A stretch of DNA of 62,919 nucleotides, filler included, from Octopus bimaculoides (GCF_001194135.2; 3 parts of 3 records of this genome joined end to end with filler, not necessarily neighbours in it); one strand, 5' to 3'; counted from the first letter of the whole stretch, positions 1,358 to 21,628 are shown. Translations and numbers: made by a program. The notes: generated from the sequence alone by a model not told the origin.

Positions 1358-1410
1358 CTACTTGAATAACACGAAGACATTCATGGTTTGCAATTTCATT
1401 AACGAATTGC
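1358..1410 (-). CDS. Gene A terminal coding exon: (G)NSLMKLQTMNVFVLFK-stop
   Basis: Strong acceptor catcttttcttaatttcag|. Phase-1 entry matches exon 4, with TAG at 1360-1358. Minus-strand AATAAA occurs downstream at about 1170-1165 and 1150-1145. An extra exon hidden in the 2447-3150 gap cannot be excluded. Confidence 0.62.
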
Positions 1411-1859
1411 CTGAAATTAAGAAAAGATGTGTTTAAAAAAGATTATTTATCTAACAATGGTGGTCACAATTATACAAAAGTTGCATGGACGTTTATCTCA
1501 AAAATAAACACATGAATACAGAAATAAATGTTTAAGACCAATATTAAGACGCCTCATTAATGCCTGCATTATAAATATCATTTATTCTAAATTCAATTAA
1601 ATCACCATATCTAATCAGTAGGAAGTACAGAGTTAGGCTCAACAGGTTGGTATTTGACGTCAGTCAAAGAGCAAACATAATTTGTAGTATTTTGGGTGTT
1701 TAGTTTATCGATTGATTTGGCAGCAATTCAAATATATTTTAAGGGACATGTTTCATGTATAATTATTAATAATGATTTCAGAATTTGTTTATGTTGTATT
1801 TGCATGATTTACCCGAAATATGATATCAATGTAAGTCATATTATGAGATAGATTATTGT

Positions 1860-2135
1860 AAAATACATTATTTACATTATTTACAGTCGACGGATATTTG
1901 TCCTCTTCTTGTTTGTTGTTAACACAACGTTTCGGCTGATATACCCTCCAGCCTTCTTCAGGTGTCTTGGGGAAATTTCGAACCTGGGTTCTGATTCCTA
2001 ATGTATTTTTCGATGTTATTATTATTATTATTATTATTATCATTATTAGTGTTCAGGTCACTGCTTGGAATCGAACTCGGAATCTTGGGGTTAGTGACCC
2101 GCGCTCTTAACGACTACGCCATATGCCCACGGGCA
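1860..2135 (-). mobile_element. tRNA-headed SINE with internal (TAA)n and a Penelope-like 3' tail
   Basis: Minus strand has an A box TGGCGTAGTCG and a B box GAGTTCGATTCC, then (TAA)n, then CCTGAAGAAGGCTGGAGGGTATATCAGCCGAAACGTTG, then a (TAAATAATG)-type tail. Confidence 0.6.
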
Positions 2136-2395
2136 TATAGATGCAGAATTATACTGGGATGACAGTATTATACTCACCTATAATTCAAACGGACATCAGT
2201 TAGATAAGCTTAGCAAGAATCTCATTACTCTCTTCCAAAGAATGGGCTTACGGATTACGATAGAAAGTAACCTTAATAACGTTGATTTTTTTAGATATTA
2301 ACTTATATTTGCAATTAGAGAAATTTAAATCCTATCGCAAGCCCAATGTAAGGCTATGTTATATTAGCAAAAAATCAAATTATCCACATACATAC

Positions 2396-2446
<51 letters not shown>

Positions 2447-3314
2447 NNNNNNNNNNNNNNNNNNNNNNNNNNNNNNNNNNNNNNNNNNNNNNNNNNNNNN
2501 NNNNNNNNNNNNNNNNNNNNNNNNNNNNNNNNNNNNNNNNNNNNNNNNNNNNNNNNNNNNNNNNNNNNNNNNNNNNNNNNNNNNNNNNNNNNNNNNNNNN
2601 NNNNNNNNNNNNNNNNNNNNNNNNNNNNNNNNNNNNNNNNNNNNNNNNNNNNNNNNNNNNNNNNNNNNNNNNNNNNNNNNNNNNNNNNNNNNNNNNNNNN
2701 NNNNNNNNNNNNNNNNNNNNNNNNNNNNNNNNNNNNNNNNNNNNNNNNNNNNNNNNNNNNNNNNNNNNNNNNNNNNNNNNNNNNNNNNNNNNNNNNNNNN
2801 NNNNNNNNNNNNNNNNNNNNNNNNNNNNNNNNNNNNNNNNNNNNNNNNNNNNNNNNNNNNNNNNNNNNNNNNNNNNNNNNNNNNNNNNNNNNNNNNNNNN
2901 NNNNNNNNNNNNNNNNNNNNNNNNNNNNNNNNNNNNNNNNNNNNNNNNNNNNNNNNNNNNNNNNNNNNNNNNNNNNNNNNNNNNNNNNNNNNNNNNNNNN
3001 NNNNNNNNNNNNNNNNNNNNNNNNNNNNNNNNNNNNNNNNNNNNNNNNNNNNNNNNNNNNNNNNNNNNNNNNNNNNNNNNNNNNNNNNNNNNNNNNNNNN
3101 NNNNNNNNNNNNNNNNNNNNNNNNNNNNNNNNNNNNNNNNNNNNNNNNNNNTTCAGTATAAACTTCTCTGATTCTGTTGTTCAAATACATAATACATAAT
3201 ACTCGCAACTTTATAGATACATACCCGCACGCACGAGCCACACAGACACACACACACACAAACACACACGCATTCACACTCACACACACACACACATATA
3301 TGCACACAAAAAGA

Positions 3315-3349
<35 letters not shown>

Positions 3350-3355
3350 ACTTAC

Positions 3356-17870: not shown

Positions 17871-18820
17871 GTAAGTGAATTAATGATATTAGGAATCGAA
17901 AGAGAGATAGATAATAACAACAATTGTTTCTATGGTTCTGTATTGAAAATACTATAATTGATCTGTGCTTTCATTACATTAAATTTACCATTATCATTTC
18001 CTAATATTGAAAAGAGTGGAATGGAAAACGACGGGTTTGCAGAAGTTATAGTTCCACTAATAAAATATATCTAATGTCCAGTCACGTACATTTACCTTCT
18101 CATTTCGTATGCCATGTAATTGTCTTTTCCACTGTCTGTTTCGTCTGCGGCTTGTGTCTGAGATAGAAAGCATAATTGTTATTTCTTGACAAAGAGCAGT
18201 GAATGAAGGAATCAGTCAGTCAATTCCACGAACTGAATGAAACTATTTAGTCTTTCTTCGACTTACTTTCCTTCCCATATGTAACGAGATGATAATAAAA
18301 GCATAATTTCTTCCTCTTTCGCTTCCTTTTTATTATGTGGATGACTTCAACTTTGATCCCATTTTCTCCCCTTCATCAAAACGATAAATATCAAGTGTTC
18401 AGTCCCTTACCCTTGCAATTTGAATACAGTAAACATTAGAGCTGGATGTATTTATATTTAAGGGGTGACTTTTTCCTCATTTTCTTACATCAACGACTCT
18501 ATATTAGCCACGTTAAACGTTCTGCTAACACAGGTGAGGAGTGGTCATCACTAAAAGTCTTTTTGCTTCTTCTTTCCTTCTTTTTTTCCTTTTTCCTTTT
18601 TCCTTTTCTCTTCTTTGAGTTATATTTAGAATATAAAATGTAATGTTTCCCCCATTTCTTTCAAACATTCAATATTGGAGAAAATTGTTTGATGAAATGT
18701 AGTTCTGCATGAAAAGACATTAGTATAATATTTGCAAATTAAAAATCTTTTTAAATAAATAAAATCAAGTAAAATATTATATTAGATATATATGCATATA
18801 TATACACAGACACACGCATA

Positions 18821-18901
<81 letters not shown>

Positions 18902-19666
18902 GTAAAGCTAGAACATCCCAGTGCTACACATATATATATATATATAACTGAACATTTGTAGAGATGAGCCACATTAGGAATAAAAAATGCAATTCTGGGC
19001 TTTACCTTCAAACATTCAATTTTGGAGAGAATCCCTTGATGAAGTCTGTGCGTGTGTGAGTGCGTGTGTCTATCTGTGTGTGCGTGTGTCTATCTGTGTG
19101 TGCGTGTGTGTATGTGCGTGCGTACGTGTGCTATCTGTGCGTGTGTGTGTGTCGGGGGTGGGGAACATGTGCATGTTTTTACTGTGTACCTTCGATCACG
19201 CCTCTTTCAATTTCATAGTTTTTGCATTAAAAAACATTAGCATCACACAAGCTAGAAAAACACGCGAAGCTCAGAACATCTCAATGCCAGACATATACAT
19301 CTGAATATTTAGAGATGAGCATTATATAAAGAAATAATTATAAGGAAAAAACATTTCTCGAATACCGGAGGTAGAGTAATATGCATTATTATTAATGTGA
19401 TGCATGTGTGTATGTTTGNNNNNNNNNNNNNNNNNNNNNNNNNNNNNNNNNNNNNNNNNNNNNNNNNNNNNNNNNNNNNNNNNNNNNNNNNNNNNNNNNN
19501 NNNNNNNNNNNNNNNNNNNNNNNNNNNNNNNNNNNNNNNNNNNNNNNNNNNNNNNNNNNNNNNNNNNNNNNNNNNNNNNNNNNNNNNNNNNNNNNNNNNN
19601 NNNNNNNNNNNNNNNNNNNNNNNNNNNNNNNNNNNNNNNNNNNNNNNNNNNNNNNNNNNNNNNNNN

Positions 19667-19723
<57 letters not shown>

Positions 19724-19760
19724 CACATATACATATGTATATATTTGTATATTTTCAGGA

Positions 19761-20085
19761 ATGAAAACGTCAAATCAATACCGTATAATTCTCAGTCGTC
19801 TGCAAGTTTTCACGATTATTTTGCTCGTGAACTTCACAACTAGTCAGCCAGCTAATGGCGGACAACTTTTTAGGAAAATAACCATGTCAAGATGCTTGCA
19901 GCTTCCAGTTCTTGCAACCGAATATACGTCATCCGTGACAGAATGTGCATTACGGTGTATGATGAATGACAAGTGTGGTTATTTTAGCTATTGTAATGGA
20001 CCGTGCAAAATGCATGAGTTGTACGACGGAGAACTTGAGGATACTGAATGCAATTGTTTATCTTACATCGGCTTCTCTGGAAACA
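19761..20085 (+). CDS. Gene B coding exon: signal peptide + 8-Cys PAN/apple-like module
   Basis: Acceptor gtatattttcag|gaATG and phase-1 donor AAC A|GTGAGT (20086). Sequence MKTSNQYRIILSRLQVFTIILLV...SVTECALRCMMNDKCGYFSYCNGPCK...ECNCLSY. All 8 mature-region Cys align with gene A. Confidence 0.88.
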
Positions 20086-21536
20086 GTGAGTAAAATCAGG
20101 TTTTACTTTTGTGTGCGTGTGTGTATTTAGCTCTCTGTATTCCCTTTTCACCATTATCCCTACGCAATACATCTAACCATCTGAATATTAAGTGCCTCTG
20201 TTTTCTCGTTTGTGTGGATTGTTATTTTGTTTGATTCATTTGGTCATTACATTAATTATTGGGGACATCTGTAACATCTGAAGGATCATATCTTTTTTAA
20301 AATTACCAGAATAAAATAATAAATAAAGTATAGTTTGTGTTTGGTCTTTAGAGGTTTTTTTTCGATATGTTACCTGGATATATGCTGTGTGAGTGGAAGT
20401 GTATATAAAAAACGTTATCAGTTTCTCGAGAAACCAAATAATTACAGATCAACAACTTTACTTTTACATCATCTATTAGTTTCACCCATTTTCTTGTTGT
20501 CATCTGTTAACAGTGGCACAACATACATTAAAATCCTTACCAGATATATATAGAAAATCAGATCTTAGTTTACATTCGTGAAATTCTTTCATTAGTATTA
20601 CGAAAATATGACAGCAGAGAACAGGGAGGATTAGTTAAAACTGCGTTCAAAATAAACTGTAATATTTAGTGAAGTCCCTCTACCTTTCTGAATTCAAATC
20701 TTGCTTTCGGGTTTTCTTCATTTCAAATACTGTACTCCTAGTAAAAGATTGTGTCCACTTTCCAAATATGTGGCCTTATGTCCATGCTAGAAATCAATAA
20801 CAGCTGAAATATTTCATGGCCAAAATGAAACGGAAAATAAGGCACATCGAACGTCTGCTGGAGACATTTCTTTGTATTTATATATATATATATATATATA
20901 TAGATAGATTATTTAACTCTATACCTCAGTTCACACACACACACACACAAACACTCTGAAAATATAACAGAATATAATCATTATATATAAAGTAAGAGGA
21001 AGTGCTCACAAGAAAATTAATACCAATACCTTCATAATCTCTGATTATCTCACATAGTTGCTACATCCATTCAGCTTGCTGAAAATTTATTTGAAGTAAT
21101 AGGTTTCTTTTTCACTGTCCTGAGAAACTGTGTATTCTTTGTATTGGAGAAAAATAACCCACTTTTATCCATTATTCAACTATTTTGACCGGTGCTGCAA
21201 GTAGGACAAAGAAATGATTTATATTTATATTTATATACGAGATGCTCATGGCTGGAACAACTTTTCCCATAAGTTTTCTCAACCAGCGTTGATTCGGTAC
21301 AACAACTAAGTTCTAGTATTTCATTTGAATATCAGATTCAGAAATTAATGAAATAGAAGCTAAAATTCAAAAATATTACGATGAATCTTGGGAAATTTTT
21401 ATATCGAATATAAAAATAAAAATTTCTAAATGAAAGCAGTAGTTTCACATATTTCTTTCAAAATCTTAATAAAATTTACTTAAAAAGTTTGTCCATTCCT
21501 TTATATTTAAAGCATTCTTATTCACAACTAATGCAG

Positions 21537-21628
21537 GTGCAGGCTGGCAGAAAGTATTCATGATGAACAAAACGTCGTTTAAAAAGAGTCCTATTTATAG
21601 ATACTGGGAAATATTGCCTATTGAAAAG
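21537..21628 (+). CDS. Gene B exon (92 nt): (S)AGWQKVFMMNKTSFKKSPIYRYWEILPIEK
   Basis: Flanks ctaatgcag| and AAG|gtaata. Same length and phases as gene A 7828-7737. Not shown in the ORF track; found by reading the sequence. Confidence 0.85.

What the first reader, a model, noticed from the sequence alone, without database searches (positions are those of the whole stretch)
1358..21628. Head-to-head pair of uncharacterised secreted PAN/apple-module genes hidden from the ORF track
Seen: two divergently transcribed genes share a homologous upstream exon, a signal+PAN exon with 8 aligned Cys (~37% identity, hand count) and an equal-length 92-nt exon (16/31 identity), with the same intron phases. 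Known: PAN/apple modules mediate protein-protein or protein-carbohydrate binding and typically have 4-6 Cys. Inference: an old inverted duplication created a lineage-specific secreted pair, possibly co-regulated from the 5.6-kb interval between their first-exon donors and possibly acting in mucus, gland or immune secretions.
Basis: partly seen in the sequence, partly recalled or inferred. Interest (0 to 1): 0.78.

Follow-up and report, generated by a model that had tools for sequence, protein, structure and literature searches.

The report
Head-to-head octopus PAN-domain gene pair
Two neighbouring Octopus bimaculoides genes that point away from each other are real paralogues from a larger octopus family of small, probably secreted proteins; each has a PAN/apple domain plus an undescribed second domain, one gene is already annotated, and no function is known.

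Summary
The window is Octopus bimaculoides chromosome CM046608.1, about 30.93-30.95 Mb.

**Gene A (minus strand).** Its five coding exons translate exactly to RefSeq LOC106876623 (243 aa, "uncharacterized"; UniProt "Apple domain-containing protein").

**Gene B (plus strand).** It has homologous exons 1-3 with the same intron phases:
- 38% identity in the PAN exon, with 8 aligned Cys.
- 16/31 identity in the 92-nt exon.
- It has no gene call or exact protein match in the sets searched, and the window edge cuts it off.

**Assembly gaps.** All gaps lie in introns or between the genes.

**Where the interpretation needs correcting.**
- The genes are not a private, lineage-specific pair. They belong to an Octopus family of at least 11 loci, six or more of them on this chromosome.
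- B is closer to LOC106876621 (59%) than to A (40%).
- A second head-to-head arrangement sits at LOC106876621.

**Domains.** The PAN assignment is sub-threshold in Pfam for A and B themselves, but relatives, a family profile and a confident AlphaFold model support it. The C-terminal ~130 aa is a beta-rich domain with no Pfam or PDB match. Its core recurs in uncharacterised extracellular proteins from cnidarians to amphioxus.

**Function.** Secretion, co-regulation and biological role remain untested. This is an ordinary paralogue cluster with a modestly interesting orphan domain.

The parts
12275..12335 (-). Gene A (LOC106876623) exon 1, non-coding. The 3' end is at 12275, followed by gtaagt. 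The 5' end was not determined; 12335 is where homology to gene B stops.
   Evidence: The exon is inverted-homologous to B exon 1. The donor is conserved in O. sinensis at 90% nt identity. The paralogues' ATG is ATT here and GTG in O. sinensis, and there is a 1-nt insertion. Translation therefore starts in exon 2, as in the annotated protein.
9488..9820 (-). Gene A exon 2. The ATG is at 9815. It encodes the hydrophobic leader plus the 8-Cys PAN/apple module and ends in phase 1.
   Evidence: The translation is identical to P0001 residues 1-109. Junctions are ttcag|CAATAATG and AAAAA|gtgagt.
7737..7828 (-). Gene A exon 3 (92 nt), the start of the C-terminal domain (..DWQKVF..); ends in phase 0.
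5699..5850 (-). Gene A exon 4 (152 nt), the conserved core of the C-terminal domain (VRLSF...FNGTDTNHTSWF...STPW); ends in phase 2.
   Evidence: the core is aligned to the metazoan family
3356..3462 (-). Gene A exon 5 (107 nt); ends in phase 1.
1358..1410 (-). Coding part of gene A exon 6, with stop codon TAG at 1360-1358.
   Evidence: the joined CDS translates exactly to P0001 (assertion passed)
17804..17870 (+). Gene B exon 1. The ATG is at 17858 and it encodes MNLK plus the first base of Gly. The donor follows 17870 and the 5' end was not determined.
   Evidence: The same ATGAATCTTAAAG|gtaagt is found at LOC106876620 and upstream of LOC106876621. The annotated paralogues P0007, P0009, P0011, P0012 and P0004 start MNLK(G/E)M or MNIKGM.
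19759..20085 (+). Gene B exon 2 (327 nt, phase 1 at both ends). It encodes the leader plus the 8-Cys PAN/apple module and has an internal ATG at 19761.
   Evidence: Pfam PAN_4 E = 0.0024 and PAN_1 E = 0.017, both below threshold
21537..21628 (+). Gene B exon 3 (92 nt), followed by gtaata. The remaining exons lie beyond the piece's edge at 22026.
12276..17857 (.). The interval between the two first exons. It holds three assembly gaps and a telomere-type hexamer array and has no ORF of note.
   Evidence: The part next to gene A (11235-14954) aligns to O. sinensis at 79-90%, no better than the introns do.

Best explanation
**What the locus is.** The window holds two paralogous members of an Octopus-expanded gene family, arranged head to head.
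- Gene A is the annotated LOC106876623.
- Gene B is a paralogue with no gene call or exact protein match in the sets searched. Its first three exons are intact, and the rest lies outside the window.

**What the products look like.** Each product is a small protein of about 243-248 aa with three parts:
1. An N-terminal hydrophobic leader, most likely a cleaved signal peptide.
2. A PAN/apple module with eight cysteines.
3. A beta-rich C-terminal domain of about 130 aa that has no Pfam family and no solved relative. Its core (..W..LPI..VKL......F.G.....WF....L.S.PW..) recurs in uncharacterised extracellular proteins of cnidarians, echinoderms, hemichordates, amphioxus and other molluscs; in many of these (not the hemichordate or amphioxus examples checked) a PAN domain comes first.

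**How the arrangement arose.** The layout comes from repeated duplication inside a gene cluster, not from a single private inversion.

**Inferred mechanism (not shown).** The proteins are secreted extracellular binding proteins. The PAN module acts as a protein- or glycan-binding unit, as it does in micronemal and Sarcocystis PAN lectins and in factor XI/prekallikrein. The C-terminal domain acts as a second recognition or assembly unit. The family diversifies quickly under weak purifying selection.
For: **Identity and gene models**
- Gene A is 100% identical to P0001 over 140/140 aa, and its five exons rebuild all 243 aa exactly.
- The locus is CM046608.1, and L001 is base-for-base identical to the window over 19,815 nt.
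- The O. sinensis orthologue keeps all five coding exons and all splice sites. dN/dS is 0.44 overall, 0.25 in the PAN part and 0.74 in the C-terminal part.

**A/B homology and selection**
- A against B: BLASTP E = 4e-28, collinear through the introns, dN 0.47, dS 0.77.
- B against LOC106876621: 59% aa identity, dN/dS 0.57, open frame, canonical junctions.

**Family and cluster**
- Supported.

**PAN assignment**
- A and B score PAN_4 18-20 bits (cutoff 27) and PAN_1 15-18 bits (cutoff 21.4).
- Relatives P0028, P0042, P0050 and P0069 pass the PAN_1 cutoff. PAN_1 matches 20 of 77 relatives.
- The family profile hits the Toxoplasma MIC4 apple domains at E = 1.5e-5.
- The AlphaFold2 model has pLDDT 90.9 and pTM 0.81.
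- Foldseek matches the Eimeria PAN module 1hky with probability 1.00 and rmsd 3.0 A over 72 columns. It also matches Sarcocystis SML-2 and the factor XI A4 domain.

**C-terminal domain**
- The representative search found 87 hits at E <= 1e-3, most of them aligned to profile positions about 120-186.
- hhalign of the octopus set against the wide set gives 98.3% probability and E = 1.2e-14.
- Partner domains in relatives are all extracellular: EGF, C-type lectin, F5/8C, Sushi, FN3, ZP, Kringle, VWD, TSP1, SRCR.
- There is no Pfam match and no PDB sequence match (best E = 0.12, a kinase, which is noise).

**Leader**
- Distant relatives have short, classical signal-peptide-like N-termini (sequences).
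Against: - No transcript or expression data could be consulted, so none of the junctions of gene B is confirmed by RNA.
- Gene B has no gene call in the annotated assembly and no exact protein in the 5.8-billion-cluster database. Its exons 4-6 could not be read, so it could be a pseudogene.
- PAN profile scores for A and B themselves are below Pfam's curated cutoffs.
- The leader has an unusually long, charged n-region of 12-18 residues. No signal-peptide predictor was available, so a signal anchor is possible.
- The binding function is inferred only from domain type and domain partners. Every relative found is labelled uncharacterised, hypothetical or unnamed, or carries an automatic name (e.g. 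HMCN1, kinase clkA).
Confidence: 0.8

Rival explanations
1. Gene B is a decaying duplicate, either a pseudogene or a 5' fragment. On this reading the locus holds one working gene (A) and a relic, so there is no functional pair.
For: No gene is called over B's exon 1 or the start of its exon 2 in the annotated assembly, although the neighbouring family members are called. No protein in the database matches B at 100%. B's downstream exons lie outside the window and could not be fetched.
Against: The frame is open over 144 codons. The MNLKG start is conserved, and all three donors and both acceptors are canonical. All eight PAN cysteines are kept. dN/dS is 0.57 against the closest paralogue, and coding identity (77%) is above the 69% of the surrounding alignment, which is mostly intron. 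The assembly is full of gaps here, which can itself defeat gene prediction.
Confidence: 0.25
2. The proteins are type II membrane proteins. They would be anchored by an uncleaved N-terminal helix that displays the PAN and C-terminal domains on the cell surface, rather than being soluble secreted proteins.
For: The n-region before the hydrophobic stretch is long and positively charged (MNLKGMKTSNQYRIILSR...). AlphaFold models one long helix over residues 3-36. Gene A has no obvious small-residue -3/-1 cleavage motif (read directly from the sequence).
Against: The uninterrupted hydrophobic stretch is only about 12-16 residues, which is short for a membrane span. Paralogues have plausible cleavage motifs, such as ..RTGAS|NY in LOC106876621..KIGVS|SN in LOC106876624 and ..TTS|QP in B. 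Distant relatives have classical short signal peptides.
Confidence: 0.2
3. This is the first reader's model: one old inverted duplication made a self-contained, lineage-specific pair that is co-regulated from a shared bidirectional control region.
For: The inverted, collinear homology covers exon 1, exon 2, intron 2 and exon 3. The first exons face away from each other.
Against: A and B are not each other's closest relatives. B has 63% identity to A0A0L8G9X6 and 59% to LOC106876621, but only 40% to A. The same introns also align to the LOC106876621, 624 and 625 loci. A second outward-facing MNLKG exon lies upstream of LOC106876621. The first-exon donors are about 5.6 kb apart, with assembly gaps and a telomere-type repeat between them. 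The part of the interval that can be compared with O. sinensis is no more conserved than the introns.
Confidence: 0.12

Closest known systems
PAN/apple domain proteins (Pfam PAN_1 PF00024, PAN_4 PF14295): Toxoplasma MIC4, Eimeria MIC5, Sarcocystis lectin SML-2, plasma prekallikrein / factor XI apple domains
   Same: The N-terminal module has the helix-on-sheet PAN fold in a confident model (Foldseek 1hky, probability 1.00, rmsd 3.0 A over 72 columns). It carries the ..ECA..C....C.YF.Y....C.. cysteine core, which aligns to the MIC4 apple domains. Family relatives pass the PAN_1 cutoff.
   Different: A and B themselves score below Pfam's cutoffs. They have eight cysteines rather than the usual four to six. 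There is a single PAN copy, followed by an unrelated domain, where MIC4 and factor XI have tandem apples. No ligand is known.
Uncharacterised metazoan proteins that share the C-terminal domain; a PAN_1 match passing Pfam's cutoff precedes it in Gigantopelta LOC121382312 and an Asterias amurensis XP_071785301, while the Mytilus LOC127710949 and Ptychodera flava proteins checked gave no PAN match, the Dendronephthya LOC114527792 PAN_1 match is sub-threshold, and the Branchiostoma proteins carry other extracellular domains
   Same: They share the C-terminal core (HMMER E from 1e-13 to 1e-4; hhalign 98.3%). In many of them a PAN domain lies in front of it, and all have an extracellular context.
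   Different: Two things are missing from the octopus cluster proteins (alignment). One is the loop of about 30-45 aa after the W.[KL]VF strand. The other is the cysteine-bearing distal half (..RRFFI...GC..D.GW.....C.W..YS..). The octopus version is therefore a trimmed, cysteine-free form of the domain.
Fibrinogen-related domain (FReD, Pfam PF00147)
   Same: This is a weak lead only. Two distant relatives (P0048, P0060) have a sub-threshold match to the first ~50 positions of Fibrinogen_C that runs into the GW.LVF strand. Foldseek lists the ANGPTL3 and FGL1 fibrinogen-like domains.
   Different: Foldseek TM-scores are only 0.24-0.31 and probabilities 0.4-0.7. TLDc domains and designed beta-barrels score about the same. 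No FReD chain or Fibrinogen_C match is found with the domain profile. I do not file it as a FReD.

Membership tests
PAN/apple domain (Pfam PAN_1 / PAN_4) | The protein itself scores at or above Pfam's gathering cutoff. | tested here: not met
   Gene A scores PAN_4 20.5 bits on the PAN exon alone and 18.7 bits as the full protein (cutoff 27), and PAN_1 17.8 / 15.8 bits (cutoff 21.4). Gene B scores PAN_4 18.3 and PAN_1 15.4 bits. E-values range from 5e-4 to 0.017, so the matches are suggestive but below threshold.
PAN/apple domain (Pfam PAN_1 / PAN_4) | Homology to accepted members through family relatives or a profile. | tested here: met
   Relatives found with the family profile pass the PAN_1 cutoff: P0028 25.0, P0042 29.4, P0050 29.5 and P0069 26.4 bits. 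PAN_1 matches 20 of 77 relatives at E <= 0.01. The family profile hits the MIC4 apple domains (4a5v) at E = 1.5e-5.
PAN/apple domain (Pfam PAN_1 / PAN_4) | PAN fold, an alpha-helix packed on an antiparallel sheet. | tested here: met
   The AF2 model has pLDDT 90.9. Foldseek matches 1hky with probability 1.00, rmsd 3.0 A over 72 columns and TM(target) 0.53. It also matches 2yil_A (probability 0.97, rmsd 3.3 A over 69) and factor XI A4 2j8j (probability 0.84). This is a predicted structure, not a solved one.
PAN/apple domain (Pfam PAN_1 / PAN_4) | Conserved disulfide core, with apple-type linkage of the N and C ends. | not testable with these tools
   Eight cysteines are invariant in five family members. 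The helix pair C62/C66 and C72/C82 align to the PAN core. Disulfide connectivity could not be determined.
Unnamed metazoan C-terminal domain family (often preceded by PAN) | Significant profile similarity over the core (..W..LPI..VKL..F.G....WF...L.S.PW). | tested here: met
   HMMER found 87 proteins at E <= 1e-3, most of them aligned to profile positions about 120-186. hhalign gives 98.3% probability and E = 1.2e-14 over 67 columns.
Unnamed metazoan C-terminal domain family (often preceded by PAN) | Cysteine-bearing distal half (RRFFI..GC..D.GW....C.W..YS), invariant or nearly so in the wide family. | tested here: not met
   This half is absent from genes A, LOC106876621, 624 and 625 and their close relatives in alignment A2. 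R126, C137, D140 and C155 of the wide-family alignment A4 have no counterpart. The octopus proteins are a trimmed subfamily.
Fibrinogen-related domain | Fibrinogen_C profile match or FReD fold match. | tested here: not met
   There is no Fibrinogen_C match in A, B or 14 of 16 wide-family domains. No FReD chain is found in the PDB profile searches. Foldseek TM is at most 0.31.
Bidirectional-promoter gene pair | Transcription starts less than about 1 kb apart, and co-expression. | tested here: inconclusive
   The first-exon donors are 5,595 nt apart, including 993 N. Transcription starts and expression cannot be read from the sequence with these tools.

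The most novel reading that the evidence does not exclude
The C-terminal ~130-190-aa module may be a genuinely undescribed, ancient metazoan extracellular domain, present from cnidarians to cephalochordates and often fused behind PAN. It has no Pfam family and no solved homologue. Octopuses have made a trimmed, cysteine-free version and amplified it into a fast-evolving cluster of head-to-head gene pairs. That cluster may serve a cephalopod-specific recognition task, for example in mucus, suckers or innate immunity.
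Probability: 0.35. Interest if true: 0.5.

Novelty: new member of a known kind. Interest (0 to 1): 0.3.

Why it matters
- **Annotation.** There appears to be an uncalled family member (gene B) next to LOC106876623. The family's first coding exon (MNLKG) is only 13 coding bases long, so it is easy to miss.
- **Protein families.** A confidently folding extracellular domain is shared by many invertebrate phyla and has no Pfam or PDB counterpart. It would be a reasonable target for a new family definition and a structure.
- **Octopus biology.** The family is one more lineage-amplified, quickly diverging set of secreted-type genes. Without expression or binding data it does not yet bear on any open question.

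Tried and rejected
- **Repeat or transposon explanation.** Rejected. The exons rebuild an annotated protein exactly, and the gene has a syntenic orthologue in O. sinensis.
- **Reading the rest of gene B.** This failed.
  - P0003 is not on record.
  - The LOC106876621 locus (L004) starts about 24 kb to the right of the window's end.
  - The O. sinensis locus L006 reaches only to window position ~14,950 and stops short of B's orthologue.
  - The other sequence collections do not hold animal genomes.
- **First AlphaFold run.** With 5 sequences it gave a poor model (pLDDT 56.6). Only the 39-sequence alignment gave a usable model.
- **Naming the C-terminal domain.**
  - Pfam on A, B and 77 relatives gave nothing.
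  - PDB profile searches gave nothing.
  - Foldseek against PDB gave nothing convincing.
  - A partial DUF7922 match occurs in one amphioxus protein (32 bits, positions 94-125 of 136). It was not seen in any other member, so I did not rely on it.
  - The FReD link was considered and not adopted.
- **Viral fold library.** The search returned an error.
- **Literature.** Searches for the LOC numbers, the UniProt accessions, and octopus or cephalopod combined with PAN/apple domain found no paper.
- **Rfam.** The scan of the window found nothing.
- **Third word-indexed protein search.** Run with the wide alignment, it returned only 8 proteins, mostly from Ptychodera, and added little.

Full report
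**Where the window comes from**

The piece (1-22026, 33.6% G+C, six N runs) is Octopus bimaculoides chromosome CM046608.1. A locus fetched from assembly GCA_001194135.2 is identical to it at all 19,815 overlapping bases. Window position w corresponds to record position w + 30,932,123. A 3.6-kb assembly gap lies immediately to the left of the window.

**Check of the observation**

The six-frame ORF list already shows the two PAN-like exons.
- The A and B PAN exons align at 38% identity (42/111, E = 4e-28).
- Eight cysteine columns are invariant in five family members.
- A sensitive self-comparison shows inverted, collinear homology across 7635-9833 against 21731-19743. It includes the whole intron between the PAN exon and the 92-nt exon at 67-75% nt identity.
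- A second inverted block lies at 12144-12335 against 18001-17804.
- The 92-nt exons (7828-7737 and 21537-21628) share 16 of 31 residues.
- The intron phases are the same in both genes: 1 after the PAN exon and 0 after the 92-nt exon. All junctions are AG/GT.
- The first-exon donors follow 12275 and 17870, so they are 5,595 nt apart.

**Gene A**

A protein search with exons 2+3 returned a 100% match. It is LOC106876623 of O. bimaculoides (243 aa), named "uncharacterized protein" by NCBI and "Apple domain-containing protein" by UniProt. It also returned an 82% match in O. sinensis, LOC118764578.

The five coding exons are:

| Exon | Coordinates (minus strand) |
|---|---|
| 2 | 9815-9488 |
| 3 | 7828-7737 |
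| 4 | 5850-5699 |
| 5 | 3462-3356 |
| 6 | 1410-1358 |

Joined together, they translate exactly to that protein. The finding's start coordinate, 1358, is the last base of its stop codon. Gene A is therefore not hidden; it is a normal RefSeq model.

**The gaps**

- Gaps 5022-5047 and 2447-3151 lie in introns 4 and 5 of gene A.
- The gap-free O. sinensis locus (L006) aligns to the window from 14954 down to 310 at 79-90% identity. One alignment runs straight across the 26-N gap.
- At the 705-N gap, O. sinensis has only about 140 nt where O. bimaculoides has about 1.5 kb of microsatellite and N.
- O. sinensis has the same five coding exons, the same junctions and 243 codons. No exon is hidden and no frame is in doubt.
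- Gap 19419-19666 lies in intron 1 of gene B, 92 nt upstream of the exon 2 acceptor. The other three gaps are intergenic.

**Gene B**

- Exon 1 ends ...CAGTC ATG AAT CTT AAA G|gtaagt, with the ATG at 17858.
- Exon 2 starts after tattttcag at 19759.
- The joined reading is MNLKG-MKTSNQY..., in frame.
- The same 13-base coding start is found at LOC106876620 and, facing outward, upstream of LOC106876621. It is also translated in the annotated paralogues (MNLKG..., MNIKG...). This supports the upstream exon independently of the A/B comparison.
- In gene A the ATG has become ATT (GTG in O. sinensis) and there is a 1-nt insertion, but the donor is kept. Gene A's exon 1 is therefore a 5'-UTR exon.
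- Gene B has no exact match among 5.8 billion protein clusters; the best hit is 59% to LOC106876621.
- No gene is called over its first two exons in the annotated assembly.
- Its visible 144 codons are open, and all eight cysteines are kept.
- dN/dS against LOC106876621 is 0.57. Coding identity (77%) is above the 69% identity of the wider B-621 alignment, which is mostly intron.
- Exons 4-6 lie beyond 22026 and could not be fetched.

**Not a private pair**

An exhaustive HMMER search with a five-sequence profile found 87 proteins at E <= 1e-3 and 12 at E <= 1e-30. The close hits with this architecture that I looked up are from Octopus bimaculoides, O. sinensis or O. vulgaris.

Positions of family members on CM046608.1:

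| Locus | Strand | Position (Mb) |
|---|---|---|
| LOC106876620 | - | 30.73-30.75 |
| LOC106876625 | + | 30.854 |
| LOC106876624 | + | 30.870 |
| Gene A | - | 30.933-30.942 |
| Gene B | + | from 30.952 |
| LOC106876621 | - | 30.988-30.997 |

LOC106874575 and LOC106874588 are also on this chromosome, and further members lie on other scaffolds.

- Over exons 1-3, B is 63% identical to A0A0L8G9X6, 59% to LOC106876621 and 40% to A.
- A's best paralogue is LOC106876621, at 43%.
- The introns of A and B also align to the 621, 624 and 625 loci.
- The outward-facing MNLKG exon about 10 kb upstream of LOC106876621 shows a second head-to-head arrangement.
- The layout is therefore a recurring product of cluster duplication. 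Possibly the pair itself is the duplicated unit, but I could not resolve that.

**Rates of change**

| Comparison | dN | dS | dN/dS |
|---|---|---|---|
| A vs B | 0.47 | 0.77 | 0.61 |
| A vs O. sinensis orthologue, whole CDS | 0.10 | 0.225 | 0.44 |
| A vs O. sinensis orthologue, PAN part | - | - | 0.25 |
| A vs O. sinensis orthologue, C-terminal part | - | - | 0.74 |

Sources. Orthologue CDS identity (88.8%) is about the same as intron identity. The genes are constrained, but only weakly, and the cysteine framework is the most stable part. These are Nei-Gojobori pairwise estimates on short sequences and are approximate.

**The PAN module**

- A and B on their own give only sub-threshold Pfam matches.
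- Three other lines of evidence support the assignment.
  - Relatives retrieved by the family profile pass the PAN_1 cutoff, and PAN_1 matches 20 of 77 relatives.
  - The family profile hits the apple domains of Toxoplasma MIC4 in the PDB (E = 1.5e-5), followed by Eimeria MIC5 and factor XI.
  - With a 39-sequence alignment AlphaFold2 gives pLDDT 90.9 and pTM 0.81. Foldseek matches the N-terminal module to the Eimeria PAN module 1hky (probability 1.00, rmsd 3.0 A over 72 columns), to Sarcocystis lectin SML-2 and to factor XI A4.

**The C-terminal domain**

- Residues ~108-243 are modelled as a beta-rich domain of about ten strands and one short helix.
- Its core is exon 4 plus the end of exon 3. 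This is the part most remote hits share. hhalign gives 98.3% probability and E = 1.2e-14 against an alignment of 16 non-octopus domains.
- Proteins carrying it come from Dendronephthya, Acanthaster, Asterias, Ptychodera, Branchiostoma, Solemya, Mytilus and Gigantopelta. All are named uncharacterised or mis-named automatically.
- Their other domains are all extracellular.
- The domain has no Pfam family and no PDB sequence match.
- The best structural matches are the ANGPTL3/FGL1 fibrinogen-like domains, TLDc domains and designed barrels. All have TM <= 0.38, which names nothing.
- Compared with the wide family, the octopus cluster proteins lack a 30-45-aa loop and the whole cysteine-bearing distal half.

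**How it probably works**

- Shown: the gene structures, the paralogy, the cluster, the PAN fold (predicted) and the conserved orphan domain.
- Inferred: the products enter the secretory pathway.
  - The leader is hydrophobic.
  - Relatives have classical signal peptides.
  - All partner domains in the family are extracellular.
- Inferred: the products act as small two-module binding proteins. PAN modules bind proteins or glycans in the characterised cases (my own knowledge of MIC4, SML-2 and factor XI).
- Whether the leader is cleaved, what is bound and where the genes are expressed are all unknown.
- Five literature searches found nothing on these loci.

**Verdict**

It overstates novelty, because gene A is annotated. 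It also misreads a cluster-wide pattern as a private inverted duplication. The modest points of interest are the apparently uncalled gene B and the undescribed, widely distributed C-terminal domain.

Noticed in passing
window 16814-16887: Telomere-type hexamer arrays occur in both orientations, (TAACCC)x7 followed directly by (TAGGGT)x5. They butt against assembly gap 16888-17115 in the interval between the two genes. This could be an interstitial telomeric sequence or an assembly join.
   Followed up: no
L004 1-65 (reverse complement), about 10 kb upstream of LOC106876621: Another ATGAATCTTAAAG|gtaagt (MNLKG) first exon points away from LOC106876621. It is 85% identical to gene B's exon 1 region, so there is a second head-to-head arrangement in the cluster. 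The partner gene lies outside the fetched locus.
   Followed up: partly
P0021 (O. sinensis LOC118762874) and P0005 (O. sinensis LOC118764386): P0021 reads MNLKG joined directly to the 92-nt-exon sequence, so the PAN exon is skipped. The frame is preserved because the PAN exon is 327 nt with phase 1 at both ends. P0005 (402 aa) carries the C-terminal domain twice.
   Followed up: no
window 1864-2128, 4288-4449, 21899-21991: Short interspersed repeats are shared with other loci of the cluster at 72-94% identity, and some occur in both orientations. They lie in introns or downstream sequence and are not part of the genes.
   Followed up: no
window 5985-6151: A GA-rich tandem array (periods 19, 40 and 59 nt; about 3-8 copies) lies in intron 3 of gene A. 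It accounts for the serine/leucine-rich and arginine/glutamate-rich pseudo-ORFs at 5875-6205.
   Followed up: no
window 9835-11235 versus L006 4918-9981: Intron 1 of gene A is about 3.7 kb longer in O. sinensis than in O. bimaculoides, which indicates an insertion or deletion between the two species.
   Followed up: no
P0027 (O. bimaculoides XP_052830469.1): This family member has a long Lys/Asp/Cys-rich low-complexity insert inside the C-terminal domain. RefSeq names it "probable serine/threonine-protein kinase clkA" and earlier named it "GATA zinc finger domain-containing protein 14-like". Both names look like artefacts of the low-complexity region.
   Followed up: no
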